Below, piece after piece: positions 11,398 to 49,500 of a stretch of 64,000 bases of DNA. A program made the translations under genes and the position numbers. Within the stretch, counting starts at the first letter, position 1. Each line of letters begins with the position of its first letter. The stretch lies in the NCBI GenBank assembly GCA_964247055.1, contig OZ176059.1, positions 2,852,001 to 2,916,000 on the forward strand, written 5' to 3'. Source of the DNA: Paragordius varius. Lineage: Eukaryota > Animalia > Nematomorpha. The notes under the pieces were generated by a model. The model did not search any database. It was not told the origin of the DNA and saw only the letters and a program-made list of their open reading frames with translations.

Positions 11398-14300
11398 TGA
11401 AAGTTGTGGATTGTGTAAAATACCCATATAAGATTGGTTACGATAATTTGATTGTATGAAAGTTATGGATTATTGTGTAAAATACCCATATAAGATTGGT
11501 TATAATTTGATTGTATGAAAGTTGTGGATGATTTTGTAACATACCCATATAAGATTGGTTAATATCATTTGAATGTTGAAAGTTTATTGTGTAAAATATC
11601 CATATAAGATTGGTTAATATCATTTGAATGTTGAAAGTTATGGATGATTGTGTAAAATACCCATATAAGATTGGTTAATATAATTTGATTGTATTAAAGT
11701 TGTGGATGATTGTGTAAAATACCCATATAAGATTGGTTAATATAATTTGATTGTATGAAAGTTATAGATGATTGTGTAAAATACCCATATAAGATTGGTT
11801 ATAATTTGATTGTATTAAAGTTGTGGATGATTGTGTAAAATACCCATATAAGATTGGTTAATATAATTTGATTGTATGAAAGTTGTGGATGATTGTGTAA
11901 AATACCCATATAAGATTGGTTAATATAATTTGATTGTTATAATGTTGTTGTGAAAAATACCCATATAAGATTGGTTAATATAATTTGATTGTTGAAATGT
12001 TGTGGATGCTTGTTAAAAAACCCATATAAGATTGGTTAATATAATTTGATTGTTGAAATGTTGTGGAATTGTGTAAAATACCCATATAAGATTGGTTAAT
12101 ATAATTTGATTGTATGAAAGTTGTGGATGATTGTGTAAAATACCCATATAAGATTGGTTAATATAATTTGATTGTATGAAAGTTGTGGATGATTGTGTAA
12201 AATACCCATATAAGATTGGTTAATATAATTTGATTGTTAAAATGTTGTCGATGCTTGTTTAAAAAACCCATATAAGATTGGTTAATATAATTTGATTGTA
12301 TGAAAGTTGTGGATGATTGTGTAAAATACCCATATAAGATTGGTTAATATCATTTGAATGTTGAAAGTTGTGGATGATTTTGTAAAATACCCATATAAGA
12401 TTGGTTAATATAATTTGATTGTTATAATGTTGTTGTGAAAAATACCCATATAAGATTGGTTAATATAATTTGATTGTTGAAATGTTGTGGATGCTTGTTA
12501 AAAAACCCATATAAGATTGGTTAATATAATTTGATTGTTATAATGTTGTTGTGAAAAATACCCATATAAGATTGGTTAATATAATTTGATTGTTGAAATG
12601 TTGTCGATGCTTGTTTAAAAAACCCATATAAGATTGGTTAATATAATTTGATTGTATGAAAGTTGTGGATGATTGTGTAAAATACCCATATAAGATTGGT
12701 TAATATCATTTGAATGTTGAAAGTTGTGGATGATTTTGTAAAATACCCATATAAGATTGGTTAATATAATTTGATTGTTAAAATATTGTGGATGATTGTG
12801 AAAAATACCCATATAAGATTGGTTAATATAATTTGATTGTTATAATGTTGTTGTGAAAAATACCCATATAAGATTGGTTAATATAATATTGTTGAAATGT
12901 TGTGGATGCTTGTTTAAAAAACCCATATAAGATTGGTTAATATAATTTGATTGTTTAAATGTTGTGGATGGTTGTTTATAATACCCATATAAGATTGGTT
13001 AATATAATTTGATTGTTAAAATATTGTGGATGATTGTGAAAAATACCCATATAAGATTGGTTAATATAATTTAATTGTTGCACAGTTGTGGATGATTGTG
13101 TAAATTACCCATATAAGATTGGTTAATATAATTTGATTGTTAAAATATTGTGGATGATTGTGAAAAATACCCATATAAGATTGGTTAATATAATTTGATT
13201 GTTATAATGTTGTTGTGAAAAATACCCATATAAGATTGGTTAATATAATATTGTTGAAATGTTGTGGATGCTTGTTTAAAAAACCCATATAAGATTGGTT
13301 AATATAATTTGATTGTTTAAATGTTGTGGATGGTTGTTTATAATACCCATATAAGATTGGTTAATATAATTTGATTGTTAAAATATTGTGGATGATTGTG
13401 AAAAATACCCATATAAGATTGGTTAATATAATTTGATTGTTATAATGTTGTTGTGAAAAATACCCATATAAGATTGGTTAATATAATATTGTTGAAATGT
13501 TGTGGATGCTTGTTTAAAAAACCCATATAAGATTGGTTAATATAATTTGATTGTTGAAATGTTGTGGATGCTTGTTTAAAAAACCCATATAAGATTGGTT
13601 AATATAATTTGATTGTTAAAATGTTGTGGATGGTTGTTTAAAATACCCATAAAAGATTGGTTAATATAATTTGATTGTTAAAAATCTGTAAATGATTGTG
13701 TAAAATACCCATATAAGATTGGTTAATATAATTTGATTGTTTAAAAGTTGTGGATGATTGTGTAAAATACCCATAAAAGATTGGTTAATTTAATTTGATT
13801 GTATGAAAGTTGTGGATGATTTTGTAAAATACCCATATAAGATTGGTTAATATAATTTGATTGTTGAAAAATTGTGGATGATTGTTTAAAATACCCATAT
13901 AAGATTGGTTAATTTAATTTGATTGTATGAAAGTTGTAAATGATTTTGTATGCCCATATAAGATTGGTTAATTTAATTTGATTGTTGAAAAATTGTGGAT
14001 GATTGTTTAAAATACCCAGAAAAGATTGGTTAATTTAATTTAATTCTATGAAAGTTGTGGATGATTGTGTAAAATACCCATATAAGATTGGTTAATTTAA
14101 TTTGATTGTATGAAAGTTGTAGATGATTTTGTAACATACCCATATAAGATTGGTTAATTTAATTTAATTCTATGAAAGTTGTGGATGATTTTTTAAAATA
14201 CCCATATAAGATTGGTTAATTTAATTTGATTGTATGAAAGTTGTGGATGATTTTTTAAAATACCCATATAAGATTGGTTAATTTAATTTGATTGTATGAA

Positions 14301-16548
14301 AGTTGTAGATGATTGTGTAAAATACCCATATAAGATTGGTTAATTTAATTTAATTCTATGAAAGTTGTGGATGATTTTTTAAAATACCCATATAAGATTG
14401 GTTAATTTAATTTAATTCTATGAAAGTTGTGGATGATTGTGTAAAATACCCATATAAGATTGGTTAATTTAATTTAATTCTATGAAAGTTGTGGATGATT
14501 TTCTAAAATACCCATATAAGATTGGTTAATATAATTTGATTGTATGAAAGTTGTAGATGATTGTGTAAAATACCCATATAAGATTGGTTAATTTAATTTA
14601 ATTCTATGAAAGTTGTGGATGATTTTGTAAAATACCCATAGAAGATTGGTTAATTTAATTTAATATGAAAGTTGTGGATGATTGTGTAAAATACCCATAT
14701 AAGATTGTTTAATATAATTTGATTGTATGAAAGTTGTGGATGATTGTGTAAAATACCCATATAAGATTGGTTAATATAATTTGATTGTTGAAAAATTGTG
14801 GATGATTGTGTAAAATACCCATATAAGATTGGTTAATATAATTTGATTGTATGAAAGTTGTGGATGATTTTGTAAAATACCCATATAAGATTGGTTACGA
14901 TAATTTGATTGTATGAAAGTTGATGATTTTGTAAAATACCCATATAAGATTGGCTAATATAATTGATTGTTGAAAAATTGTGGATGATTGTGTAAAATAC
15001 CCATATAAGATTGGTTAATATAATTTGATTGTATGAAAGTTGTGGATGATTTTGTAAAATACCCATATAAGATTGGTTAATATAATTTGATTGTTGAAAT
15101 TTTGTGGATGATTGTGAAAAATACCCATATAAGATTGGTTAATATAATTTGATTGTATGAAAGTTGTGGATGATTTTGTAAAATACCCATATAAGATTGG
15201 TTACGATAATTTGATTGTATGAAAGTTGATGATTTTGTAAAATACCCATATAAGATTGGTTAATATAATTGATTGTTGAAAAATTGTGGATGATTGTGTA
15301 AAATACCCATATAAGATTGGTTAATATAATTTGATTGTATGAAAGTTGTGGATGATTTTGTAAAATACCCATATAAGATTGGTTAATATAATTTAATTCT
15401 ATGAAAGTTGTCGATGATTGTGTAAAATACCCATATAAGATTGGTTAATATAATTTGATTGTATGAAAGTTGTGGATGATTGTGTAAAATACCCATATAA
15501 GATTGGTTAATATAATTGATTGTTGAAAAATTGTGGATGATTGTGTAAAATACCCATATAAGATTGGTTAATATAATTTGATTGTATGAAAGTTGTGGAT
15601 GATTTTGTAAAATACCCATATAAGATTGGTTAATATAATTTGATTGTTGAAATTTTGTGGATGATTGTGAAAAATACCCATATAAGATTGGTTAATATAA
15701 TTTGATTATATGAAAGTTGTGGATGATTGTGTAAAATACCCATATAAGATTGGTTAATATAATTTGATTGTATGAAAGTTGTACATGATTGTGTAAAATA
15801 CCCATATAAGATTGGTTAATATAATTTGATTGTATGAAAGTTGTGGATGATTTTGTAAAATACCCATATAAGATTGGTTAATATAATTGATTGTTGAAAA
15901 ATTGTGGATGATTGTGTAAAATACCCATATAAGATTGGTTAATATAATTTGATTATATGAAAGTTGTGGATGATTGTGTAAAATACCCATATAAGATTGG
16001 TTAATATAATTTGATTGTATGAAAGTTGTGGATGATTTTGTAAAATACCCATATAAGATTGGTTAATATAATTTGATTGTTGAAATTTTGTGGATGATTG
16101 TGAAAAATACCCATATAAGATTGGTTAATATAATTTGATTATATGAAAGTTGTGGATGCTTGTGTAAAATACCCATATAAGATTGGTTAATATAATTTGA
16201 TTGTTGAAATGTTGTGTATGCTTGTTATAAACCCATATAAGATTGGTTAATATAATTTGATTGTTGAAATTTTGTGGATGATTGTGAAAAATACCCATAT
16301 AAAATTGGTTAATATAATTTGATTATTTAAATGTTGTGGATGCTTGTTTAAAAAACCCATATAAGATTGGTTAATATAATTTGATTGTTGAAATTTTGTG
16401 GATGATTGTGATAAATATCCATATAAGATTGGTTAATATCATTTGAATGTTGAAAGTTATGGATTATTGTATAAAATACCCATATAAGATTGGTTAATAA
16501 AATTTGATTGTATGAAAGTTGTTTATGCTTCTTTAAAAACCCATATAT
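11398..16548. repeat. 62-bp satellite, array 1 (about 83 units)
   Basis: Consensus GATTGTATGAAAGTTGTGGATGATTGTGTAAAATACCCATATAAGATTGGTTAATATAATTT; variant blocks change along the array. Confidence 0.97.
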
Positions 16549-20918: not shown

Positions 20919-23900
20919 TAATTTGATTGTATGAAAGTTGTGGATGCTTGTGTAAAATACCCATATAAGATTGGTTAATATAATTTGATTGTATGAAAGT
21001 TGTGGATGATTTTGTAAAATACCCATATAAGATTGGTTAATATAATTTGATTGTATGAAAGTTGTCGATGCTTGTGTAAAATACCCATATAAGATTGGTT
21101 AATATAATTTGATTGTATGAAAGTTGTGGATGCTTGTGTAAAATACCCATATAAGATTGGTTAATATAATTTGATTGTATGAAAGTTGTGGATGATTTTG
21201 TAAAATACCCATATAAGATTGGTTAATATAATTTGATTGTATGAAAGTTGTGGATGATTTTGTAAAATACCCATATAAGATTGGTTAATATAATTTGATT
21301 GTATGAAAGTTGTCGATGCTTGTGTAAAATACCCATATAAGATTGGTTAATATAATTTGATTGTATGAAAGTTGTGGATGCTTGTGTAAAATACCCATAT
21401 AAGATTGGTTAATATAATTTGATTGTATGAAAGTTGTGGATGATTTTGTAAAATACCCATATAAGATTGGTTAATATAATTTGATTGTTGAAAGTTGTCG
21501 ATGCTTGTGTAAAATACCCATATAAGATTGGTTAATATAATTTGATTGTATGAAAGTTGTGGATGATTTTGTAAAATACCCATATAAGATTGGTTAATAT
21601 AATTTGATTGTATGAAAGTTGTGGATGCTTGTGTAAAATACCCATATAAGATTGGTTAATATAATTTGATTGTATGAAAGTTGTGGATGATTTTGTAAAA
21701 TACCCATATAAGATTGGTTAATATAATTTGATTGTTGAAAGTTGTCGATGCTTGTGTAAAATACCCATATAAGATTGGTTAATATAATTTGATTGTATGA
21801 AAGTTGTGGATGATTTTGTAAAATACCCATATAAGATTGGTTAATATAATTTGATTGTATGAAAGTTGTGGATGCTTGTGTAAAATACCCATATAAGATT
21901 GGTTAATATAATTTGATTGTATGAAAGTTGTGGATGATTTTGTAAAATACCCATATAAGATTGGTTAATATAATTTGATTGTTGAAAGTTGTCGATGCTT
22001 GTGTAAAATACCCATATAAGATTGGTTAATATAATTTGATTGTATGAAAGTTGTGGATGATTTTGTAAAATACCCATATAAGATTGGTTAATATAATTTG
22101 ATTGTTGAAAGTTGTCGATGCTTGTGTAAAATACCCATATAAGATTGGTTAATATAATTTGATTGTATGAAAGTTGTGGATGATTTTGTAAAATACCCAT
22201 ATAAGATTGGTTAATATAATTTGATTGTATGAAAGTTGTGGATGCTTGTGTAAAATACCCATATAAGATTGGTTAATATAATTTGATTGTATGAAAGTTG
22301 TGGATGATTTTGTAAAATACCCATATAAGATTGGTTAATATAATTTGATTGTATGAAAGTTGTCGATGCTTGTGTAAAATACCCATATAAGATTGGTTAA
22401 TATAATTTGATTGTATGAAAGTTGTGGATGCTTGTGTAAAATACCCATATAAGATTGGTTAATATAATTTGATTGTTGAAAGTTGTCGATGCTTGTGTAA
22501 AATACCCATATAAGATTGGTTAATATAATTTGATTGTATGAAAGTTGTGGATGATTTTGTAAAATACCCATATAAGATTGGTTAATATAATTTGATTGTT
22601 GAAAGTTGTCGATGCTTGTGTAAAATACCCATATAAGATTGGTTAATATAATTTGATTGTATGAAAGTTGTGGATGATTTTGTAAAATACCCATATAAGA
22701 TTGGTTAATATAATTTGATTGTATGAAAGTTGTCGATGCTTGTGTAAAATACCCATATAAGATTGGTTAATATAATTTGATTGTATGAAAGTTGTGGATG
22801 CTTGTGTAAAATACCCATATAAGATTGGTTAATATAATTTGATTGTATGAAAGTTGTGGATGATTTTGTAAAATACCCATATAAGATTGGTTAATATAAT
22901 TTGATTGTTGAAAGTTGTCGATGCTTGTGTAAAATACCCATATAAGATTGGTTAATATAATTTGATTGTATGAAAGTTGTGGATGATTTTGTAAAATACC
23001 CATATAAGATTGGTTAATATAATTTGATTGTATGAAAGTTGTGGATGATTTTGTAAAATACCCATATAAGATTGGTTAATATAATTTGATTGTATGAAAG
23101 TTGTGGATGCTTGTGTAAAATACCCATATAAGATTGGTTAATATAATTTGATTGTTGAAAGTTGTCGATGCTTGTGTAAAATACCCATATAAGATTGGTT
23201 AATATAATTTGATTGTATGAAAGTTGTGGATGATTTTGTAAAATACCCATATAAGATTGGTTAATATAATTTGATTGTTGAAAGTTGTCGATGCTTGTGT
23301 AAAATACCCATATAAGATTGGTTAATATAATTTGATTGTATGAAAGTTGTGGATGATTTTGTAAAATACCCATATAAGATTGGTTAATATAATTTGATTG
23401 TATGAAAGTTGTCGATGCTTGTGTAAAATACCCATATAAGATTGGTTAATATAATTTGATTGTATGAAAGTTGTGGATGCTTGTGTAAAATACCCATATA
23501 AGATTGGTTAATATAATTTGATTGTATGAAAGTTGTGGATGATTTTGTAAAATACCCATATAAGATTGGTTAATATAATTTGATTGTATGAAAGTTGTGG
23601 ATGATTTTGTAAAATACCCATATAAGATTGGTTAATATAATTTGATTGTATGAAAGTTGTGGATGCTTGTGTAAAATACCCATATAAGATTGGTTAATAT
23701 AATTTGATTGTATGAAAGTTGTGGATGATTTTGTAAAATACCCATATAAGATTGGTTAATATAATTTGATTGTATGAAAGTTGTGGATGATTTTGTAAAA
23801 TACCCATATAAGATTGGTTAATATAATTTGATTGTATGAAAGTTGTGGATGCTTGTGTAAAATACCCATATAAGATTGGTTAATATAATTTAATTGTATG

Positions 23901-26669: not shown

Positions 26670-28390
26670 TTACAATCTGTTTAAACGTTGTACATTATTT
26701 TGTCTATTAAAATAATAGTAATTTAATCCGGTGCCAGACATTTTAAACTCATACTTATCCATTTTATAAGTGGTAGGGTTACCAAACACTTCATCATTGA
26801 CATCGTTAAAGAATTCATTATCTAGAAAGATAAATTTACTTTAAAATATATTTGGTGTAATGCATACCATGTGAAAAAATAATATGCACTTTCTAAAATG
26901 TCAAACTTAAATTTAACCATTTTAATATCAGCTCACTACCGTTTTTATGTAAAGTTACGAACACTTAAATATGCAATTTATAATAATATAACTTCCCTCT
27001 CAAATCAATCAATACTTTATTAATTCTGTCTTTGCTAAGTAAACGATTCCAGCCGGTTATATTGTTTAGTCCTGTACTATAGGCTGAAAATTTTCTCAAT
27101 TTTGGAAAAGTTGAAAGCACCGAAATGTCAAATGATATCAAACGATTGTAGTCCAAATTAATTTGTTTTATTGAATGTTTATACGAAGCGGGTGAAAGAT
27201 CACCAGATGTAATTTTACCGTGTTTTATTGTCAAATTTTGTAGTTGACTCCAATTTTCAATGGGTTTCAAGGTCCCTAATCCATACACAAAATTTAAATC
27301 TAAAACTTTGATATGATTTGGTTTTTGAAAAGTGTCCGGAGTAACTGTGCAATACATGACTTTCAAAGTGTTGAGAGTTTCGGGGAAGGATGGTGAGGAG
27401 AATGAGATGTTAATGTTCCGCATATGAGATAATCTGCCATTTATGAATAAGGAACGAACATTGGGAAAATTTTTGAATATGTCAGTCAGATCATAAAAAT
27501 TATCCACAATGTCCAAGAGGACTTCATTCGCTGATGTCAAACCTTGTACAGCAAAAGTGTTTGTATATGACTCTATCTCTAATCTTTTAAGTGCAGGCAA
27601 ATTCACACGCATCGTGTTATCAAATTTGGCATTTAGTGATAAATACTCTATGCCTGGATGACTAATATTTCCTACCAAACGTACATTGCCAATATATAAT
27701 CGTGCTCTTTCCAACTCTCTAAAATGATTCAATACGGTCCAGTTAAAATCTTGTTCTTCATATCCCTTTACTTCTAGGGTAAGTGATTTAACTATTATCT
27801 GTGCAGACAATAGCCTTAACAATTCAGAGGTATGTTCAATTTGATTCAAAATCAACAATTCTAAGGTCTGTTAAATTTTTTTCAAAATGCACAAAAAATG
27901 TTGAATTGTGGATACAATATTCTAGACTGGTAGTGGTATAATTAAGCTCTCCCAACATATCTTGAATTGTTGAAAGATTTGCACATTTCTCTTCTATCAT
28001 CCCATATTTTATATAGTTGCATTGAAATATCTCGGTATTTTTGCATTCATTGGACACATCTTTTATGAGCAATATTATTAACTTTTCTATGCTGGTGTTA
28101 TTAGAAAAATCATAAATTGAACCACCATATTCGCATGTACCATTAAAGTTGCCATCCTCTATCATATTCATATCATATTTCGAAGTATTTTCAGTAACTA
28201 TATAAAATATAAAAAAATTTCAAGAATACATAGAATGACATTTTTGTCAAAAAGTGTAACATTATTTTACAATAAAATTAATAAAAGTACCTCTTCTTAA
28301 TGTTTCGTTTTGAGAAAGACTAGGAATGGTTTCCTCAGAGGCTTTAAAAGATAAGCACAGAAGCAAAAATGATATAAGAATAAATATCAT
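26670..28390 (-). pseudogene. Secreted LRR protein, copy 1 (disrupted)
   Basis: Exons 28390-28291 (MIFILISFLLLCLSFKASEE signal peptide), 28197-26997 and 26821-26670. A 2-nt deletion at about 27840 (AATTGAA vs AATATTGAC in copy 2) splits the ORF; the exon-2 donor reads GGAAG instead of GTAAG (26996-26995). Confidence 0.8.
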
Positions 28391-29298: not shown

Positions 29299-31448
29299 GG
29301 TTTAATAATTATTTTAAATATTTGGTATATTAAATAATTTATAAACATCCAATTTATTTCAAAATATATGTTCATCCCATTAAATTAAGGATGTGAATTT
29401 CGACTACCTTAACTAAAACTGGTTTAAACCGTAATGATTAAATTTATTAGGGTAACTTCATACCGACCATATTGTTATAGTAACTAACTGCCTTAAAATA
29501 TTTTCAGACATAAAAATATTTTTCACAGATAGCTTTCTTGTGCAAATATATTATTTGTTACGGTATAAGTTAAGGTGTAGTAGATTAATACTTAACCCCT
29601 CATATACAAAATTAAGGATAATATTATTAAGAAAACAACTTTTTCTGATTTCTAAAATTTTACATTATATATTACTTAAGAATACTCTCCAGGGGTGTCC
29701 AACAGGGTACTCGCGAGCCATTAGTGGCTCATTGAAAATTTTGAGTGGCTCTTTGAAAATTAAAAAATTTTTTTTAAAAAAAAATAATTTTTAATTTTTT
29801 TCAAAAATTTTTTATATGTAAATTATGCATTTTAATTTTGACATTTAAATTTTTAGAAACTTTTAATAAAATTCTTTATTATGAATATCTATCAATGCAT
29901 TCATTTAATCATTTATAAAACACATTTTTTCCAGCATGTTATTTCCAAGTTCAAGATGATAACTTTCACATTAAATTAAAACATTAAATTACTTGCAAAA
30001 AATAGATATTTAAAGTAATTTATTTAGCTTTCATACCAATACTCGGAATTATAGTTTGGGTCCAATGAAAGATTGAAATACTTGCAAAAAATAGGTATTT
30101 AAAATAATTTATTTAGCTTTCATACCAATACTGGGAATTATAATTAAGGTCCATTGAAAAATTAAATTACTTGCAAAAATAATTTAAAATAATTTATATA
30201 GCTTTCAATATGCATAAATCCAAGAAAGTAACTAGAAAATACAATCCCTGGGAATAAAATATGGGTTTATTAATTTTCAACAAAGCGGAGTGCCTTATTT
30301 GCAAATTTACGACAAACGGGTTTCGCGAATATAATTTAAAATGACATGCCAATACCTGCATTTGGATTTTATTAATATGACTACAGAAATGAAAATAATA
30401 AAATTATTATTAATCTCCAACCAACAATTTCATTCACGCAACCTTATCCGATAGTAAAAGCAAGTTATATTGTTGCCAATTTACTCGCCAAAAAAACGAA
30501 GCCTTATTCTTATGGTGATTTGTAAAGGAATGCGTGGAAATTATAAAATATTTTGCCTAATAAAGTTGAATTAATATCTAATATAGTCTTTCGCGCAATA
30601 CTATGTGTCGACGAATTACAGACATCGCAGAAGAAATTCAACTTTCCCTAAAAGAAAGAATTCAAATTTGTGGCGTTTTCCTTGTCATTTGATGAAAGCA
30701 CAGATATAAGCAACATATCACAATTGGTAGTCTATTTGATGAAAGCACAGATATAAGCAACATATCACAATTGGTAGTCTTTATTCGAGGGATAAATTTT
30801 TTTAATATAACAGAAGATATGTTAGGCTTACTTTCGATGAAAATACAACTAACAGAGATGATATATTTCATGCAATTTTAAAATGTATTGAGGACAATAA
30901 ATTAAATATGAGGGCATGTTTGACAACAGATGGTGGCCCTATGATAGGAAAAAACAAGGGAACGTGAAATTATAGTTATAAGATGGAATCCGATGGTATT
31001 AATGTTGACCATATATATAATGCATTGCATGATTCACCGTGAAAATCTCTGCGCACATGCTCTGACAATGGACAATGTTATGACTGTTGTTATTAAAGTA
31101 GTTAATTTTATAAAATCTCATGCTATGAAGCATAGTTTAAGGAGTTATCAAAAGAAATTCATTCAGAATATGGAGATCTTATGTATTTTCAAATGTAAGG
31201 TGGTTTAGTCAAGGGGAATGTCTAAAAATATATTATTTATTAAAAAGAATAAAAATTTTTCTATTGCAGAATAATTATTTGGTATAGGAAATAACCAATG
31301 AAGATTGGTTGTCAGAATTATGCTTTCCCGTAGATATTACCGAAAAACTAAATCAATTAAATGAATCCTTGCAAAAGCAAGATAATTTGATTGTTGATGC
31401 GAATAACCATATTAAAGCGTTTTGTAAAAAATTGACGTTATTTGAATG

Positions 31449-31987
31449 ATAGAAAATCGGATAATTCATGGCGGAAGGCGCCATCTCCTTATAAGTTATT
31501 AATCAAGAAGGAGTATAAATAGTTAGTCTACCGAGTTGCAGGTTGGATATATTAGTTATTCCTAATTAGCAACAGAGACTATGAAAAAAATAAACACTGT
31601 CAACAAAATTTGGTTTCTTGATTTTCTAATTATAAAAAGCTTAATCCTGGCTTAAGGATTATAAGGAGTCATAATATTTGGTTGAATTTTGGTATTATCG
31701 GTTTTCCAATATGGACTCTAAGCTCTATAATATTCGTTTCCCCGACTCTATTCGGTTTCAATCTAAAACTCAATATATACAATTCCTGAACTGACAGTGT
31801 TTACCCGTGTTCATTATGTGTGGCTGATGAGTCCACAAAAAGGACGAAACGCGTCTCACACTATGACACGTGGTAAACACTGTCAACAAAATTTGGTTTC
31901 TCATAGTCTCTGTTGCTAATTAGGATATACTAATAAATCCAACCTGCAACTCGGTAGACAAACTATCTATACTCCTCTTGATTTATT
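31449..31987 (+). mobile_element. Non-autonomous Penelope-like/retrozyme-type insertion nested in hAT family 1
   Basis: 12-bp TSD GTTATTTGAATG (31437-31448 and 31988-31999); removing the insert restores the transposase frame; inverted arms about 31499-31584 and 31901-31987; 28-bp direct repeat at 31591 and 31874; contains a hammerhead ribozyme. Confidence 0.8.
31818..31861 (+). ncRNA. Minimal type I hammerhead ribozyme
   Basis: GTGTGG-CTGATGA-GTCC-ACAAAAA-GGAC-GAAA-CGCG-TC-TCACAC: complete core (CUGAUGA, GAAA, GUC site at 31853-31855), 4-bp helix II, minimal helix III with palindromic CGCG; helix I extends out to 31792-31885. Confidence 0.9.
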
Positions 31988-32432
31988 GTTATTTGAATGC
32001 CATTTAAAAAAAATAATGCTGAACACTTTCCAGAATTGAATAGATTTAAAGCTGGTAAAACTAACGATTTTTCAAAATATGCAGATCAAATTAACATATT
32101 ATCAAAAGCTTTTAATAATCGATACGGGGATATGACAAAATATGAAAAAATATTTGATTTATTTTTTGTCCATTCTACGTTGATGCTATCAACGCTCCTA
32201 TTAATTTACAAATGGAATTACTAGATTTGCATTCCAATAATGAATTAAAATTATTATTTAAGCAAACAAAAATATATTGAATTTTATAAAAAATATATAA
32301 CGTTTGATAAATTTCCCAAATTGATATTTATTTAGCAAAGCATTATGATATTTATACTGTTTATTTTCTTTTTGATATGAAAATTAGCACATCTATATGT
32401 TAATATAATAAATTTATTTGTTACCAATGTGT

Positions 32433-32471
<39 letters not shown>

Positions 32472-32836
32472 GGCTCTTTGGAATTTTGAGGTCGAAAAGG
32501 TGGCTCTTCAAGCCATTTGTGTTGGACACCCCTGCTCTACACCTTTGTCATTATAGGTGTAATATAATTTATTTCATCTATTACAATAAATTGATAGATA
32601 TCGATTTAAAAAAACATACATTTGTTTACTCAAACTACATATACCTATTAATAATTTAAAATTTTCCAAGATTTTTGTTGTAATTTTACCTTCATTAATT
32701 TAAAATGTTAAAGGACTGATATGCATAACAGGCTAATCGAAAATTCGCAGAACTGATTTGAGCAAAAGAATTTATGGCAGTTTGTTAGAGTTTATATTTC
32801 AATTGATTTTATTTTATAAATTTATTTCGTTTTCGA

Positions 32837-33264: not shown

Positions 33265-34581
33265 GAACTTCTGCATTTTCACAGAATTCCTTAAGCGTTT
33301 CAACGCGTATATTGCATATTTAAAATAGCAATAACAACTACATTTTCCGCATCTAGGGGTAACAAATCAGCAGCTGTTTGAATAGCGTTGTGTATTATAT
33401 GCTCTGCACACCCAACGCCAATAATGTTTTGATTAAGATTATCTGCTAATTTATCAAAAATATATTTTGCTCCCCTCCTTGCTTTTCCACCAAAGTTCGT
33501 ATTGGTGTTATCAGCGCAATATGCGATGATTTTGTCTTTTAAATTATTTTTTGCTACAATACTTATTAAGGAAGTAATAAGTATGTCGGAATTTTCATCG
33601 GGTAGAGAAATAAAATCTAAAATTTAAATTTTTACTCTGGCTTCTGCAAAATATCTTATTAAAGTAGCAAATAATTTTGTTTCCTTGAGATTTGATACAT
33701 CAGAGTATAGCGATATGAAATTAATTTTCAGCACTTTGTATTTCAGAAAAAGCATGTGGGGAAAGGACATTGCACAATGGCTTCAGCCTTTGTAAGGGCT
33801 CATGTAAATTTTTTATTGAATAAGGTACAAACTGTCAGGTACAATCCATAGAGCTAAAGGAATGATTGTGATTAACGGCGTAAAAAGATAAAACACCTTC
33901 GACTAGTGCCAAATTCTTTTCTTCCTCTCCTCGATAAAAATCGCTCATTTGGTAAGATGATACCGCCATATCTAAAAATTTATGTTTATGCTTTGTAATA
34001 TCATGCTTGCCGCCATGTGTTAGGGTTAATTTCCCCTTGCATAAAGAACATTTAACAAATGATTCATTCTTCGTTTTTTTGATAAAAGTCACTTTCATTA
34101 ATTTATCGTTGAATTTACAACCTCTTTTTGTACTCATATTTTAAACTAATAGTATAAAATATTATATTACCCTAATTTTCTAGAGTAAACGTATAAGCTA
34201 CCGATTTGTGGTATTAATTTGTCTTTTAGATAATGTTGGCAGGTAATAAAACTAAAATATTAGTATACAAAAATATTTTATTAGTTTAATCTGGAGTAAC
34301 GTATAAGCTACCGATTTATGTTCTTTTAGATAATGTTGGCAGTAGGAGTAGGAAGCAAAGTGTATAATCATATGATATAATTCCGAAAAAAATAAATATT
34401 TTTAATTTAAAATTTAGATTTAAAGATAACTAATGGATAAAAATTTAAACGGATAAAAAAAATAATTTTTTTATAAAAAATTTAAATGTATTTAAAAATT
34501 TATTTTATATAATCGTGAAAAAGCGGGACATTCTAACATAGCGGGACAAAGTGTGAAAAAGCGGGACGTCTGGTCACCCTA
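33265..34581 (-). mobile_element. hAT family 2, 3'-truncated element with decayed BED-finger transposase
   Basis: Terminus TAGGGTGACCAGACGTCCCGC at 34581 with GCGGGAC subrepeats; ORF 34137-33835 (CSLC...HGGKHDITKH, EGVLSFYAVNHNHSFSSMDCT); downstream YCADNTNTNFGG and IGVGCAEHIIHN motifs. Confidence 0.85.
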
Positions 34582-38703: not shown

Positions 38704-40418
38704 ATGAAATTCATTCTTATATCCTTTTTGCTTATCTGCTTCTCTTTTAAAGCTTCTGAGGAAACCATTCCTAGTTCTTCGCAAAACGAAACATATAATA
38801 TAGGTACTATTATCAATTTTATTGTGAAATAATGTTACGCTTTTTGACAAAAATGTCGTTCCATATATTCTTATATTTTTTGAATATTAATATAGTAATT
38901 GGGAACACATCGAAATGTGATTGGCATATGATAGAGGATGACAACTTTAATGGTACATGCGAATATGGTGGTTCAATTTATGATTTTTCTAATAACACCA
39001 GCATAGAAAAGTTAATAATATTGCTCATAAAAGATGTGTCCAATGAATGCAAAAATATCGAGATATTTCAATGCAACTATATAAAATATGGGATGATAGA
39101 AGAGAAATGTGCAAATCTTTCAACAATTCAAGATATGTTGGGAGAGCTTAATTATACCACTACCAGTCTAGAATATTGTATCCACAATTCAACATTTTTT
39201 GTGCATTTTGAAAAAAATTTAACAGACCTTAGAATTGTTGATTTCGAATCAAATATTGACCATACCTCGGAATTGTTAAGGCTATTGTCTGCACAGATAA
39301 TGGTTAAATCACTTACCCTAGAAGTAAAGGGATATGAAGAACAAGATTTTAACTGGACCGTATTGAATCATTTTAGAGAGTTGGAAAGAGCACGATTATA
39401 TATTGGCAATGTACGTTTGGTAGGAAATATTAGTCATCCAGGCATAGAGTATTTATCACTTAATGCCAAATTTGATAATACGATGCGTGTGAATTTGCCT
39501 GCACTAAAAAGATTAGAGATTGAGTCATATGCAAACACTTTTGCTGTACAAGGTTTGACATCAGCCAATGAAGTCCTCTTGGACATTGTGGATAATTTTT
39601 ATGATCTGACTGACATATTCAAAAATTTTCCCAATGTTCGTTCCTTATTCATAAATGGCAGATTATCTCATATGCGGAACATTAACATCTCATTCTCCTC
39701 ACCATCCTTCCCCGAAACTCTCAACACTTTGAAAGTGATGTATTGCACAGTAACGCCGGACACTTTTCAAAAACCAAATCATATCAAAGTTTTAGATTTA
39801 AATTTTGTGTATGGATTAGGGACCTTGAAACCCATTGAAAATTGGAGTCAACTACAAAATTTGACAATAAAACACGGTAAAATTACATCTGGTGATCTTT
39901 CACCCGCTTCGTATAAACATTCAATAAAACAAATTAATTTGGACTACAATCGTTTGATATCATTTGACATTTCGGTGCTTTCAACTTTTCCAAAATTGAG
40001 CAAATTTTCAGCCTATAGTGCAGGACTAAACAATATAACCGGCTGGAATCGTTTACTTAGCAAAGACAGAATCAATAAAATAGAGATAGATTTGGGAGGT
40101 AAGTTTAATTTTGTTATAAAAACACTAGTTTAATTAACCTTATTTAAGTGTGCATTTAAGAAAATGCTTATTTGAAATTTAAATAAATTCAACTAATTTA
40201 TCATTCGAAAGAAAGTGTAAAATTATTTTTTCACGATTATAATATGCATTACATCAAATATATATTTTAAATATTTTTTCAATCTAGGTAATGAATACTT
40301 TAACGATGTTAGTAATGAAGTGTTTAGTTTGAACTATACCACTTATAATACGAGGGATAAGTATGACTTCAAAATGTCAGGCACCAGATTGAATAATTTA
40401 TATTTTAATAGATTGTAA
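38704..40418 (+). CDS. Secreted leucine-rich-repeat protein, copy 2 (3 exons, about 477 aa)
   Basis: Exons 38704-38803 (signal peptide MKFILISFLLICFSFKASEE), 38896-40098 and 40288-40418, all GT-AG and in phase; LRR-type segments LKRLEIES, IKVLDLNF, LQNLTIKHGKI and IKQINLDYNRL; many N-x-S/T sites. Additional 3' exons cannot be excluded. Confidence 0.8.
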
Positions 40419-46500: not shown

Positions 46501-49500
46501 CATCATTAATATGAAATATATATTCTGGCAGAGCCTATTTTTTATTCAAAATGTCATTTTTCGTAATAATATAAAATATAAATAATAAAATAATCTTAAA
46601 ATAACAACATATTGATCACGTTTATTAAAATCAAAATGGTTGACACTTAACTTTCATGTGAAAAAATGCGTAATTATATATATATGTGTATATAATCTTT
46701 TTAAGATATACCAACCAAAACTTAATCCTAATGCATAAAGTATTAATTCGTAAGCTTTTAAAAACGGCAAAAGTTTTTTTGTGCTCACCTTAAGCCATTC
46801 CTCATTTCAGTTATTAGGGTTTAATATTTGTTTTTTAATTATATTTTTTATTTCAATATATGGTTAGACCTAGATGATAGTGTACGTCTTGGCAAATTTA
46901 TCTAACAATGGTAATCAAAATTTACAATTTTATCATCTACCTATCTTACAAGATATCTTGTTAGTTGTAGAAATTCTATATTTATATGGTTTTGAAGTTT
47001 TTAAATTGTGATATAATAAAGTTTTGTTTTGGCATATAAGTTGGTTAAAATTACACTGCATTTCGCAATAATAAAATATGTATTATAAATTTTATTGTAA
47101 CAACATTTGCGAAACCAATTTCGCAAAAGAATTAATTGTAAATATACCAAATAATTTGTGCGATACATATATACATACATATCAATATTTTATTTAATAC
47201 TAAATTTTAACAAAATGCCATGCATGCATTTATGCTATTTACTATATATTTGACAACATCAGTTTAATTCTAATACTTAAACAAACAGATCCCACTAAAA
47301 TATGACACTACATATTTATATGATAACATACAAATTTTTTGGTTCAACAGTTGGATACAACATATCCATTTTAATCCTTTGATTCAAATTGGGGTAGATA
47401 AATACCCCAGTCTGTTTAAAATTAAATTCTTTAAAAAATATGGAAGGGTTTAAAATTAAATTCTTTAAAAAATATGGAAGGATTCTGAAACCATGGCAAA
47501 ATCTTGCACTTATATAACATTGAAATATACTAAAAATTTTATTCAAAAATATTTGATATTACTTATTTTAAGCTAAAACCGAAAGGTAAAAATTTAGTCA
47601 ACGTGGCATGGGTGCAATGGTAAAATTAAAAAAAAATACAAAATAAATATCAATGTTAGATGTAATTTAGATAAAAAATTAGCCTTAATTTTACCCTTAA
47701 AATTAAATGAAGACATTTTTTGCAGAAATTTTGGAAAATAAAAATGGCATCCAAGTAGTTTGACATGGAACTTTTTTTCAAAACAAAATTTTATTTAAAT
47801 ATTTTGGCATAAGTATATAATTTTTATTAGGATAGAAGCATAAAATTGGAACCGTTTCCGTCAGTAGTTTTTTGCAAATCCTAACTCAAATTTAGTCAGG
47901 GGTATTTAGATACCCCAATTTGAATCGAAGTGTTAATACAGTTAAAACAAAAAAAACAAATATAAAAATAAAACAAAAAAGCCAAAAACTTTTAAATCAG
48001 TACGGTAGGCATAGTACAATCGTATATAATCATCCATCCAAACACGAGCCATACGTAAACTATTGAGCCCGTGGGTATCCTGTTTATCAGCGGGCCATTC
48101 AAAGGGATGTGTTGCTCGAAATATGTGCCCCACATGGGAACAAGGAATAAATTCTAAACTACCATGACATTGCCAAACCTAACGAAATTACAGTAAAAAT
48201 TAAAATTATATACGGAGGACAAAACGATTATAAAGACAAATGTTTTTTTTTTCTAAAAGACAAAACCACCATATTTTTTGAAACCTTAATTTTTATAACG
48301 ATAACTCATAGAGTTTCAAACTATAAAGTAGGAAATAAAATGTAAATTGATAAAACAAGAAATTTATGTGGTATACAATTGTAATGAAATGGCTTTAATA
48401 GGATAAACTAAGGTGTGAAAAATATCATTGTCTGTTAGAAAAAAAAATTGTCTGTATATTTTTACGTTTTATCCGTATAATTTCAGTTTTTACTGTAATT
48501 ATAAAGACATGACTATGACGACGAGTTCTAGCGCAATTTACATGGTAGTAAAAAGACATTAAAGAATAATATTTCTTTATAAAAAATTTTGATGCTTGAT
48601 TTCATCTCAAACTAACATCATTGCCAAAATTATCGCAATAAATAACATGGCAAAATGGTTAGAATTATAAGGAAACTCTAAGACTTAAATTTTGAAAAAA
48701 ACAACATTTTTTTGAACAAACCTAGCGCAATCAAAATATTTTAAAGTGAAATAAGTAGAGCTTAGATAATCATTAGAGTAGAAAATTATAATGTATAACC
48801 AATCAAAATAAAATTTTGATTTTATTCATTACCTGTTTTGGAAGGGGGAGTAAAGATGTCGCGATGTAAATAGTTATAGACTCAATCATTTATATTATTA
48901 GGATTGTAATAAAATAATATTGTTTTTATAAGTAAAATTAAGAATCAAAAAGAAAGATTTCCATCAAACAAAATATCATTAGCCTTTTACTTTTTTATAA
49001 TTTATTTATTGTAAAGTAAGAATGTATTAATATTGTGATTTATATGCAATTTAATTCCTTTTATATAAATAACGAGACAATGCCTTACTCTAAATGAAAG
49101 TTCCAAATTTTCGCCACCCCAAATCTCCATCCCTTCATCATAGTACCCAATTTGTTGAAAGTAGGCTTTACTTAAGGCAAATAAACCACCAGCCATGGTT
49201 GCAGATCTATAAACATGTTTAAACAGATACATATATTTGTAAATTTTTCTTTCAATTTTAACTAATTAACTACTATGGAACTCATCTATGAGAGTGTTTA
49301 ACTTCACACAAAAAAAGTTAATTCATGCTTATCATTCTAATTTTTAGATTTCTGATTAATGTGAGAGATTTATATGGTCTAAAACCAATAATAAAGGTAA
49401 ATAATGTTAATAAAATTTGGCCACACTTAGCATTTGTTTGGACTAAAAATATCTGTGTATGTCTCTAAAATTTATAAAAATTTCATCAGTATTATAGGGT

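What the first reader, a model, noticed from the sequence alone, without database searches (positions are those of the whole stretch)
31792..31885. Hammerhead ribozyme embedded in a 94-nt hairpin
Seen: intact core CUGAUGA/GAAA with GUC cleavage triplet (cut after 31855), helix II GUCC/GGAC, a single C-G helix III within palindromic CGCG, and helix I GUGUGG/UCACAC. Helix I extends through CGUGUUCAUUA/UAUGACACG to a perfect 14-bp UGACAGUGUUUACC/GGUAAACACUGUCA stem. Established: minimal type I hammerheads with a tiny helix III occur in Penelope-like pLTRs and animal retrozymes and can cleave as dimers. Inference: a functional self-cleaving RNA in this genome.
Basis: partly seen in the sequence, partly recalled or inferred. 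Interest (0 to 1): 0.9.

Follow-up and report, generated by a model that had tools for sequence, protein, structure and literature searches.

The report
Hammerhead ribozyme in a solo retrozyme
The sequence is a genuine, textbook animal-type hammerhead self-cleaving RNA motif, carried by a 539-bp non-coding Penelope-like ("retrozyme") insertion in a dead transposon; such elements are already known to be very common in animal genomes, so it is real but ordinary.

Summary
A complete type I hammerhead lies at 31805-31877 (+), at the tip of a 94-nt hairpin (31792-31885). It has a 6-bp helix I, a 4-bp helix II, a 1-bp helix III capped by palindromic CGCG, and a predicted cut at 31855/31856. It scores 35.4 bits on Rfam HH9 (E 9e-7 locally), below the curated cut-off of 52. 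None of 300 shuffled windows gave a comparable motif.

It belongs to a 539-bp non-coding insertion (31449-31987) with a 12-bp target-site duplication, inside a dead FAM200/GTF2IRD2-like (hAT-derived) ORF. Public contigs contain the matching empty site. The insertion has the Penelope-like element (PLE) layout: an inverted arm at its left (5') end, a 28-nt partial tandem, a tail at one end and a constant 3' end.

In contigs from four related organisms, the hairpin is the most abundant and best conserved part, and it occurs with many different flanks.

This architecture is the published "canonical metazoan type I hammerhead", thought to cleave as a dimer, in non-LTR retrozymes and PLE pseudo-LTRs. 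With one ribozyme, this locus is most likely a solo offspring copy, not a circle-producing source. Cleavage and expression could not be tested.

The scan already holds about 145 hammerhead notes for this genome. Verdict: new member of a known kind, low interest.

The parts
31437..31448 (.). Left copy of the 12-bp target-site duplication GTTATTTGAATG
   Evidence: Identical 12-mers at 31437-48 and 31988-99. Contigs join 31448 directly to CCATTT/32007, which is the empty site (tables 5 and 5c).
31449..31497 (+). 'Tail': 49 nt at the left end that extend beyond the inverted repeat. Contains a small GC-rich palindrome (ATGGCG..CGCCAT).
   Evidence: Not matched in the right arm. Its reverse complement follows arm sequence in a + oriented copy from organism C (loose end at 31916). 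Other copies break off at about 31464-31476 (table 8). Matches the 30-40-bp tail described for PLE insertions (PMC8557442).
31498..31588 (-). Left arm: an inverted copy of the element's 3' region
   Evidence: 91 nt, 90% identical to the reverse complement of 31897-31986.
31591..31618 (+). Upstream 28-nt direct repeat (partial tandem copy): the last 12 nt of the hammerhead hairpin plus the 16 nt that follow it
   Evidence: 100% identical to 31874-31901, spacing 283 nt.
31619..31791 (+). Body of the 283-nt unit. Non-coding, with no significant structure of its own.
   Evidence: No ORF over 38 aa. Fold z = -0.3. Summed contig depth is 10-20 thousand against 70-176 thousand for the hairpin in X1.
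31792..31885 (+). 94-nt hairpin with the hammerhead at its tip. The conserved module of the family.
   Evidence: MFE -46.4 kcal/mol, z -6.5. Contigs break off at 31789/31793 and 31884 into differing flanks in all four runs (table 7).
31805..31877 (+). Type I hammerhead ribozyme motif, predicted to cut between 31855 and 31856
   Evidence: Rfam HH9 full-length match, 35.4 bits, E 8.9e-7. All core positions are intact. Descriptor hits 0 of 300 shuffles.
31849..31854 (+). Palindrome ACGCGU: helix III (A15.1-U16.1) and its loop. Candidate dimerisation site.
   Evidence: Sequence. Self-duplex -8.9 kcal/mol. The dimer mechanism is taken from PMC4209133 and PMC7229834.
31874..31901 (+). Downstream copy of the 28-nt direct repeat
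31897..31986 (+). Right arm: the 3' region of the element, with a constant family 3' end at 31986
   Evidence: Inverted repeat with 31498-31588. Five contigs in X1 and four in X3 match up to 31986 and then continue into unrelated sequence (table 7).
31988..31999 (.). Right copy of the 12-bp target-site duplication
30600..32224 (+). Host sequence: a dead, frame-broken FAM200/GTF2IRD2-like (hAT-derived) transposase remnant, itself highly repeated, interrupted by the insertion at 31448/32000
   Evidence: Translations. Atlas features score 0.96 with 205 shared features to PF27046 clusters for 31309-31446. Flanks have very high contig depth, and empty-site joints are present. Pfam itself is silent on the short fragments. 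The outer limits of 30600 and 32224 are approximate.

Best explanation
The 94-nt hairpin carries a canonical metazoan type I hammerhead ribozyme. It belongs to a non-coding, non-autonomous retroelement of the non-LTR-retrozyme / Penelope-like pseudo-LTR kind.

What is shown:
- The 539-bp element (31449-31987) inserted into a dead hAT-derived transposon copy and duplicated 12 bp of target.
- The insertion has the layout typical of Penelope-type reverse transcription: an inverted copy of its own 3' region at the 5' side, a 28-nt partial tandem, a tail at one end, a constant 3' end and a variable other end.
- The hairpin is the most conserved and most often reused part of the family.

What is inferred from published relatives:
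- At family level, the ribozyme serves in multimeric or tandem transcripts of source copies.
- Two neighbouring ribozymes pair through the ACGCGU palindrome to build a stable shared helix III.
- They cut after the GUC and release unit-length RNAs with 5'-OH and 2',3'-cyclic phosphate ends.
- A tRNA ligase can circularise these RNAs, and a Penelope-like reverse transcriptase copies them back into DNA.

My conclusion for this locus: it has one ribozyme and 1.1 units. It is therefore most likely a solo offspring copy. If transcribed, it could at most cut weakly, or cut after pairing with another transcript, and it cannot release a unit-length RNA or a circle on its own.
For: Motif:
- All core nucleotides are intact, with helix I of 6 bp, helix II of 4 bp, and helix III of 1 bp plus a palindromic tetraloop.
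- The HH9 alignment matches the 4/3 internal loop of helix I (UUA../UA.) and the loop 2 sequence CAAAAA. These are the positions used for tertiary contacts.
- Chance is excluded.

Insertion:
- 12-bp target-site duplication.
- Empty-site contigs in organisms A and B (tables 5 and 5c).
- 91-nt inverted arms and a 28-nt direct repeat 283 nt apart.
- Contigs of other copies end at the same 3' position, 31986, with unrelated flanks. The left ends vary (tables 7 and 8).
- No ORF, no tRNA-like head and no B box.

Family:
- 778 contigs of X1 lie on the 801-nt stretch.
- Summed depth over the hairpin is 5-15 times that of the rest of the unit in X1 and X3.
- The flanks beyond 31789 and 31884 differ between contigs in all four runs.
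- Within the hammerhead, the only listed common variants are 31823 G>A, which turns the G-U wobble at the base of helix I into A-U, and 31839 A>C in loop 2.

Literature:
- The same helix sizes and the dimer logic are described in PMC4209133.
- Non-LTR retrozymes, their circular RNAs and a helix III of one base pair capped by a palindromic tetraloop are in PMC7229834.
- The Penelope insertion anatomy (partial tandem, inverted 5'-truncated copy, tail) is in PMC8557442.
- Solo monomers as non-mobile offspring, and the origin of retrozymes from pseudo-LTRs, are in bioRxiv 10.64898/2026.07.22.740005.
Against: - The score is below Rfam's gathering threshold for HH9 (35.4 against 52).
- The nearest-neighbour minimum-energy fold pairs part of the core. 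The hammerhead-compatible fold is 4.8 kcal/mol less stable.
- No RNA run holds the sequence, and the kind of runs X1-X7 is not on record. Depth can therefore be read neither as copy number nor as expression.
- No full tandem dimer of this 283-nt unit was seen.
- No Penelope-like reverse transcriptase that shares the 3' region was identified.
- The body of the unit is not rod-like, unlike many retrozyme circles.
- The list of variants is truncated (36 not shown). Conservation of the core is therefore supported, not proven.
Confidence: 0.8

Rival explanations
1. This very locus is an active source. It is transcribed, and its single hammerhead cleaves efficiently, either alone (helped by the helix I / loop 2 tertiary contacts) or by pairing between two transcripts. 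The products are discrete, biologically used RNAs.
For: The core and the tertiary-contact positions are intact. A contig that matches the inner junction 31527-31648 without a difference has a word depth of 1075 in X1 (table 8), so this exact arrangement may exist in several copies or be expressed.
Against: There is only one ribozyme and only 1.1 units. Published motifs with a one-base-pair helix III cleave poorly as monomers (PMC7229834, PMC4209133). No RNA run holds it. It lies inside a dead transposon between two divergently oriented LRR ORFs, so there is no obvious promoter.
Confidence: 0.12
2. The element is a fold-back DNA transposon (MITE-like) that captured a hammerhead hairpin. The long inverted arms are its terminal repeats, it moves by cut-and-paste, and the ribozyme is a passenger without a role.
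For: The 91-nt inverted arms at 90% identity flank the unit, and there is a clean target duplication. Other first-reader notes in this genome describe hammerheads at the apex of fold-back elements (unchecked).
Against: The arms are asymmetric: the tail is on one side only. The right end is constant and the left end variable. A partial tandem of the ribozyme's own 3' part lies inside the left arm. These are Penelope-type features (PMC8557442). A 12-bp duplication is long for a DNA transposon (my own knowledge).
Confidence: 0.05
3. The long, nearly perfect hairpin is mainly a small-RNA precursor (miRNA- or siRNA-like), and the hammerhead core is incidental to that role.
For: The 94-nt hairpin has a 14-bp perfect outer stem and is very stable. 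There is a weak hit to mir-2008. A read-through transcript of the whole insertion would also form a roughly 90-bp double strand between the arms.
Against: The mir-2008 hit is 23.5 bits against a gathering score of 93, E 0.06 in a 1.7-kb scan, so it is not significant. The complete hammerhead core is far beyond chance. No small-RNA data were available.
Confidence: 0.03

Closest known systems
Canonical metazoan type I hammerheads of non-LTR retrozymes (newt and axolotl satellite 2 / HHR_Amex1, Schistosoma Sm-alpha, coral and mussel retrozymes; PMC7229834, PMC4209133)
   Same: Type I topology. Helix I of 6 bp followed by an internal loop, and helix II of 4 bp (GUCC/GGAC) with an A-rich loop 2. 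Helix III of one base pair capped by a palindromic tetraloop, hence the dimer logic. Unit length (283 nt) falls within the 150-450-nt range. Low GC, no ORF, and a target duplication longer than 4 bp.
   Different: Here there is only one full unit plus a 28-nt partial copy, not a tandem array. The unit outside the hairpin is not predicted to be rod-like. An extra roughly 90-nt 3' region and an inverted 5' arm are present. No circular RNA or cleavage is shown.
Penelope-like elements and their pseudo-LTRs (PMC8557442, PMC4209133; bioRxiv 10.64898/2026.07.22.740005)
   Same: Insertion anatomy: a partial tandem, an inverted 5'-truncated copy forming flanking inverted repeats, a short tail at one end, and a hammerhead near the 3' end. 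Non-autonomous derivatives of pseudo-LTRs are described.
   Different: There is no RT / GIY-YIG ORF here or elsewhere in the window, and the autonomous partner is unknown. The ribozyme is the canonical type with loop contacts. It is not the 'min-HHR' variant (long helix II, short helix I) that is most typical of animal PLEs.
Rfam RF02275 Hammerhead_HH9 (intronic amniote, Xenopus and Schistosoma-like type I hammerheads)
   Same: Best-scoring Rfam family. A full-length alignment with the same core, the same helix I geometry (6 bp, then a 4/3 internal loop) and loop 2 CAAAAA.
   Different: The score of 35.4 bits is below the gathering score of 52. Helix III is 5 nt shorter. The genomic setting is a retroelement insertion, not a conserved intron.

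Membership tests
Hammerhead ribozyme, type I (Rfam clan CL00010) | Conserved core: C3 U4 G5 A6 N7 G8 A9, G12 A13 A14, the A15.1-U16.1 pair, and H17 at the cleavage site | tested here: met
   CUGAUGA at 31824-30, GAA at 31846-48, A31849 with U31854, C31855. Aligned to the model core without a mismatch.
Hammerhead ribozyme, type I (Rfam clan CL00010) | Three helices around the core, with helix I open (type I) | tested here: met
   Helix I is 6 bp and continues into the outer hairpin. Helix II is 4 bp. Helix III is only 1 bp with a tetraloop, as published for animal motifs (PMC4209133).
Hammerhead ribozyme, type I (Rfam clan CL00010) | Score at or above the curated Rfam gathering threshold | tested here: not met
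   HH9 gives 35.4 bits against 52, and nothing is found at gathering thresholds. The E-value of 8.9e-7 is still far from chance.
Hammerhead ribozyme, type I (Rfam clan CL00010) | Site-specific self-cleavage giving 5'-OH and 2',3'-cyclic phosphate ends | not testable with these tools
   No RNA run holds the sequence. Contigs carry no information on molecule ends (table 6).
Hammerhead ribozyme, type I (Rfam clan CL00010) | Pairing kept by covariation among family copies | tested here: inconclusive
   Only one informative change is listed: 31823 G>A, which keeps the pair with U31856 (G-U to A-U). No copies could be fetched for an alignment, and the variant list is truncated.
Animal non-LTR retrozyme | Tandem repeats of a 150-450-nt unit, each with a type I hammerhead | tested here: not met
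   At this locus there are 1.1 units (283-nt spacing of a 28-nt repeat) and one ribozyme. It fits the 'solo monomer' class of the 2026 preprint. Tandem source copies of this family were not seen.
Animal non-LTR retrozyme | Non-coding, low GC, target-site duplication longer than 4 bp | tested here: met
   No ORF over 44 aa in the insertion. GC is 34%. The duplication is 12 bp.
Animal non-LTR retrozyme | Expressed as unit-length linear and circular RNA | not testable with these tools
   No RNA run holds it.
Penelope-like element (non-autonomous derivative) | Insertion anatomy: partial tandem (pseudo-LTR), inverted 5'-truncated copy, tail at one end, constant 3' end | tested here: met
   compared with the description in PMC8557442. 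The partial tandem is very short (28 nt).
Penelope-like element (non-autonomous derivative) | 3' region shared with an autonomous RT + GIY-YIG element of the same genome | not tested
   No RT-like ORF appears among the 62 open frames of 75 aa or more in the window (only five were scanned with Pfam).
SINE (Sm-alpha-like, pol III) | tRNA-derived head with A and B boxes | tested here: not met
   No tRNA-like gene in 31300-32100. No B-box match in the element.

The most novel reading that the evidence does not exclude
The 94-nt hairpin may be an exchangeable module in its own right. The ribozyme plus a long perfect extension of helix I is kept nearly unchanged while the rest of the element diverges or is swapped between families and between at least four related species. 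The module would then serve a second purpose, such as a recognition or priming structure for the Penelope-like reverse transcriptase. A related possibility is that this retroelement copy is being multiplied as a passenger of a non-autonomous hAT DNA transposon. Other notes of this scan report 537- and 540-nt hammerhead elements inside hAT remnants on other chromosomes.
Probability: 0.15. Interest if true: 0.5.

Novelty: new member of a known kind. Interest (0 to 1): 0.22.

Why it matters
It adds one more family to the very large set of hammerhead-bearing retroelements of animals. The 283-nt unit and 94-nt hairpin module are present in several related species. The locus is a clean, well-bounded example: target duplication, an empty site in public contigs, an inverted arm, a partial tandem and a tail. 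It could therefore help in annotating the many hammerhead sites of this genome, and in testing the idea that retrozymes are non-autonomous Penelope derivatives. It does not open a new question by itself.

Tried and rejected
1. Rfam at gathering thresholds over the whole window found nothing. The motif shows up only in the E-value scan.
2. I searched the window for further copies with blastn and with a hammerhead descriptor and found none. No family alignment could be built from the window.
3. A metagenome scan with the core, helix II and helix III pattern gave one hit, L001. It shares the core, helix II and ACGCGUC, but helix I is hardly paired and the flanks are unrelated, so it is of no use for covariation.
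4. I tried to fetch other copies through exact ORF products of the host and of the hairpin. Neither is on record.
5. No RNA runs hold the sequence. The only RNA-labelled runs of organism A are tiny and lack it. Cleavage and expression therefore stay untested.
6. I considered reading the 28-nt repeat as a long target duplication of an insertion into a fold-back. I rejected this because its first 12 nt are the 3' arm of the conserved hairpin, which other copies carry with different downstream sequence.
7. I tested for homology between the unit body and the 3' arm. There is none above shuffled controls.
8. A rod-like fold of the 283-nt unit as a circle is not supported. The signal comes from the hairpin alone.
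9. A SINE / pol III head is absent.
10. Identifying the organism failed. A 433-aa LRR ORF has no relatives in the protein database. The atlas only shows an animal (GALNT exon) and gives a weak, unreliable hint of Orthonectida for the host transposase cluster.
11. Pfam did not recognise the short fragments of the host transposase. The atlas features did.

Full report
**1. The observation**

In standard hammerhead numbering:

| Feature | Coordinates |
|---|---|
| Core C3-A9 (CUGAUGA) | 31824-31830 |
| Helix II (GUCC / GGAC), closing loop ACAAAAA | 31831-34 / 31842-45 |
| G12 A13 A14 | 31846-48 |
| A15.1 paired with U16.1 | 31849 / 31854 |
| C17 | 31855 |
| Predicted cut | between 31855 and 31856 |
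| Helix I (GUGUGG / UCACAC), 6 bp | 31818-23 / 31856-61 |
| Outer perfect 14-bp stem | 31792-31805 / 31872-31885 |

The helix I pair next to the core is a G-U wobble. The four nucleotides between A15.1 and U16.1 are CGCG, so ACGCGU is a 6-nt palindrome. Helix III is therefore one base pair capped by a palindromic tetraloop. Beyond the six pairs of helix I comes a 4/3-nt internal loop (UUAU / UAU), then an imperfect stem, then the 14-bp stem.

**2. Is it more than chance?**

- Rfam finds nothing at its curated thresholds over the whole window.
- In an E-value scan of 31000-32700, the best match is Hammerhead_HH9. It spans the full model at 35.4 bits, E 8.9e-7, against a gathering score of 52.
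- That alignment places the internal loop of helix I and the loop 2 sequence CAAAAA on the model's own positions. These are the positions known to make the tertiary contact. The main loss of score is a 5-nt shorter helix III.
- A simple descriptor of my own finds only this site on either strand of the window. It requires the core, helix II of at least 3 bp, A15.1/U16.1, H17 and helix I of at least 5 bp. It hits 4 of 300 dinucleotide-preserving shuffles. None of the 300 reaches the observed quality of helix II at least 4 bp and helix I at least 6 bp.
- The hairpin folds at -46.4 kcal/mol, z = -6.5.
- The minimum-energy fold pairs part of the core. A fold compatible with the ribozyme costs 4.8 kcal/mol more. 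This is usual for hammerheads, whose junction is held by tertiary contacts that the energy model ignores. It is still a caveat.

**3. What surrounds it**

The hairpin is part of a bounded insertion.

- The 12-mer GTTATTTGAATG occurs at 31437-48 and again at 31988-99.
- The 539 nt in between consist of:
  - a 49-nt segment (31449-97);
  - a 91-nt arm (31498-31588) that is the reverse complement of 31897-31986 at 90% identity;
  - a 28-nt segment (31591-31618) identical to 31874-31901;
  - a 173-nt body;
  - the hairpin;
  - the right arm.
- The 28-nt repeat is made of the last 12 nt of the hairpin plus the 16 nt that follow. It is a short upstream partial copy of the element, 283 nt from its partner.
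- There is no ORF of note, no tRNA-like head and no B box.
- The body and the arm are unrelated to each other.
- The body has no structure beyond chance (z = -0.3). The unit folded as a 283-nt circle owes its stability to the hairpin alone.

**4. The host sequence**

- The flanks translate into a frame-broken transposase remnant.
- Pfam does not recognise the short pieces.
- The 46-aa piece that ends at the insertion point matches FAM200/GTF2IRD2-like (hAT-derived) clusters by language-model features. The score is 0.96 with 205 of 256 features shared, and all ten best family-bearing hits agree.
- The locus lies between two LRR ORFs that point away from each other (26965-27858 minus, 38832-40133 plus). 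It is therefore probably intergenic.

**5. Evidence from public runs**

No RNA run holds the sequence. Six runs of unrecorded kind, from organisms coded A, B and C, hold much of it, and three runs from D, E and F hold small shares. I laid Logan contigs of four runs (A, B, C, D) on 31350-32150 at 80% likeness. There are five results.

1. **The empty site exists.** Contigs of A and B join 31448 to CCATTT/32007. That is the host repeat without the insertion and with a single copy of the 12-mer. So this is a true insertion into one member of a repeated transposon family.
2. **The hairpin is the dominant module.** Summed word depth over 31782-31889 is 70-176 thousand in X1, against 10-20 thousand over the body. 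In X3 it is 158-529 against 21-94.
3. **The hairpin has many different flanks.** Contigs stop matching at 31789/31793 on one side and at 31884 on the other, in all four runs. The continuations agree only 55-83% among contigs, with one group of three contigs agreeing almost fully.
4. **The 3' end is constant and the other end variable.** Five contigs of X1 and four of X3 match up to 31986 and then run into unrelated sequence, so 31986 is a shared end. Contigs on the left arm break off at 31464-31476. One contig of organism C has the reverse complement of the 49-nt segment downstream of arm sequence in the + orientation. That segment therefore belongs to the element's 3' region.
5. **Few common variants in the ribozyme.** Within the hammerhead, the only listed variants reaching a tenth of the depth are two:
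   - 31823 G>A, about a third of the depth in X1, which changes the G-U wobble at the base of helix I into A-U;
   - 31839 A>C in loop 2.

Caveats on these data:
- The variant list is truncated.
- The kind of the runs is not on record, so depth is neither copy number nor expression.
- Contigs say nothing about molecule ends.

**6. Comparison with what is known**

- Cervera and de la Peña (PMC4209133) describe "most metazoan HHRs". They are type I, with helix I of 6 bp and helix II of 4 bp interacting through loop nucleotides. Helix III is 1-2 bp capped by a small palindromic loop. Such a motif cleaves poorly alone and folds into an active dimer when a second copy is near. The motif here fits point by point.
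- The same group showed that such ribozymes sit in 150-450-nt tandem repeats, the non-LTR retrozymes. [quoted passage not shown]
  - An axolotl motif with a single-base-pair helix III and a palindromic tetraloop cleaved only 6% in one hour as a monomer, but cleaved efficiently in a dimer construct.
  - RtcB ligase circularises the products (PMC7229834).
- Craig et al. (PMC8557442) describe Penelope-like insertions. They are frequently 5'-truncated, arranged as partial tandems that form pseudo-LTRs, and often have an inverted 5'-truncated copy at the 5' end that creates flanking inverted repeats. A 30-40-bp tail occurs at one end, and hammerheads lie in the pseudo-LTRs. The anatomy in section 3 matches this description.
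[quoted passage not shown] It treats solo monomers as offspring that can no longer transpose.

**7. Best reading**

This is a real, canonical animal type I hammerhead. It is the conserved module of a non-autonomous Penelope-type / retrozyme family.

- The locus is a solo insertion with one ribozyme and 1.1 units.
- The cleavage-circularisation-reverse transcription cycle is inferred from published relatives. It was not shown here.
- A single motif with this helix III is expected to cut weakly, unless two transcripts pair through ACGCGU. The computed self-duplex is -8.9 kcal/mol.
- This copy cannot release a unit-length RNA by itself.

Rivals:
- An active source locus.
- A fold-back DNA transposon with a captured hairpin.
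- A small-RNA precursor (the mir-2008 hit is 23.5 bits against 93, not significant).

All three are less well supported. Details are in the Rival explanations section.

**8. Earlier notes of the scan**

- A note on this same window (s1-277281, 31437-31999) proposed a retrozyme / Penelope-like family with a 283-nt unit and an inverted arm. My checks agree with its boundaries.
- About 145 notes on this genome mention hammerheads. They include elements with a 450-nt unit, partial tandems, 5' inversions and target duplications.
- Two notes describe hammerhead elements of 537 and 540 nt inside hAT transposase remnants on other pieces.
- Those last two notes, together with a word depth of 1075 for a contig that matches the inner junction 31527-31648 exactly, raise a possibility. 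This composite may have been multiplied along with its hAT host. I could not test that.
- The scan has therefore found this kind of element many times before, on other DNA of the same genome.

**9. Verdict**

It is not shown for function at this locus.
- It is a new member of a known and very common kind, of low interest. There is modest value as a cleanly bounded example for annotation.

Noticed in passing
window 30687-30780: A perfect 47-nt tandem duplication inside the dead hAT-derived ORF. It repeats the conserved 'FDESTDISNISQLVV' segment.
   Followed up: no
window 30000-30207: Two and a half copies of an 85-89-nt tandem repeat (89% identity) just upstream of the transposase remnant.
   Followed up: no
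window 11441-16062 and 21350-23445 (minus strand frames): Satellite arrays whose units give the same open frame again and again ('PILYGYFTQ...NQSYMGILQNHPQLSYNQ'). They lie on both sides of the 4.2-kb palindrome noted by another reader.
   Followed up: no
window 47945-50212, minus strand: Exons of a polypeptide N-acetylgalactosaminyltransferase (GALNT)-like gene. The atlas features score is 0.95 to GALNT fragments. This shows that the window comes from an animal.
   Followed up: partly
window 33303-34140, minus strand: Two open frames of about 100 aa that look like another transposase remnant: a Cys/His-rich zinc-finger-like N-terminal piece and an 'AYCADNTNTNFGG' piece. They sit next to the hAT-derived remnant in opposite orientation. 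I read this by eye only.
   Followed up: no
L001 4142-4173 (minus strand), metagenome contig Ga0209679_1008605: A hammerhead-like site with the same core, the same helix II (GUCC/GGAC) and the same ACGCGUC, but a different loop 2 and hardly any helix I pairing. It lies in an unrelated, apparently eukaryotic contig.
   Followed up: partly
window 31350-31448 and 31988-32150: The hAT-derived host sequence is itself extremely abundant in the contigs of organisms A and B. Its summed depth is comparable to that of the hammerhead hairpin, and many variants are present.
   Followed up: partly
window 32424-32481: A (TA)n microsatellite forms a perfect AT hairpin and gives weak, non-significant hits to several miRNA models.
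   Followed up: no
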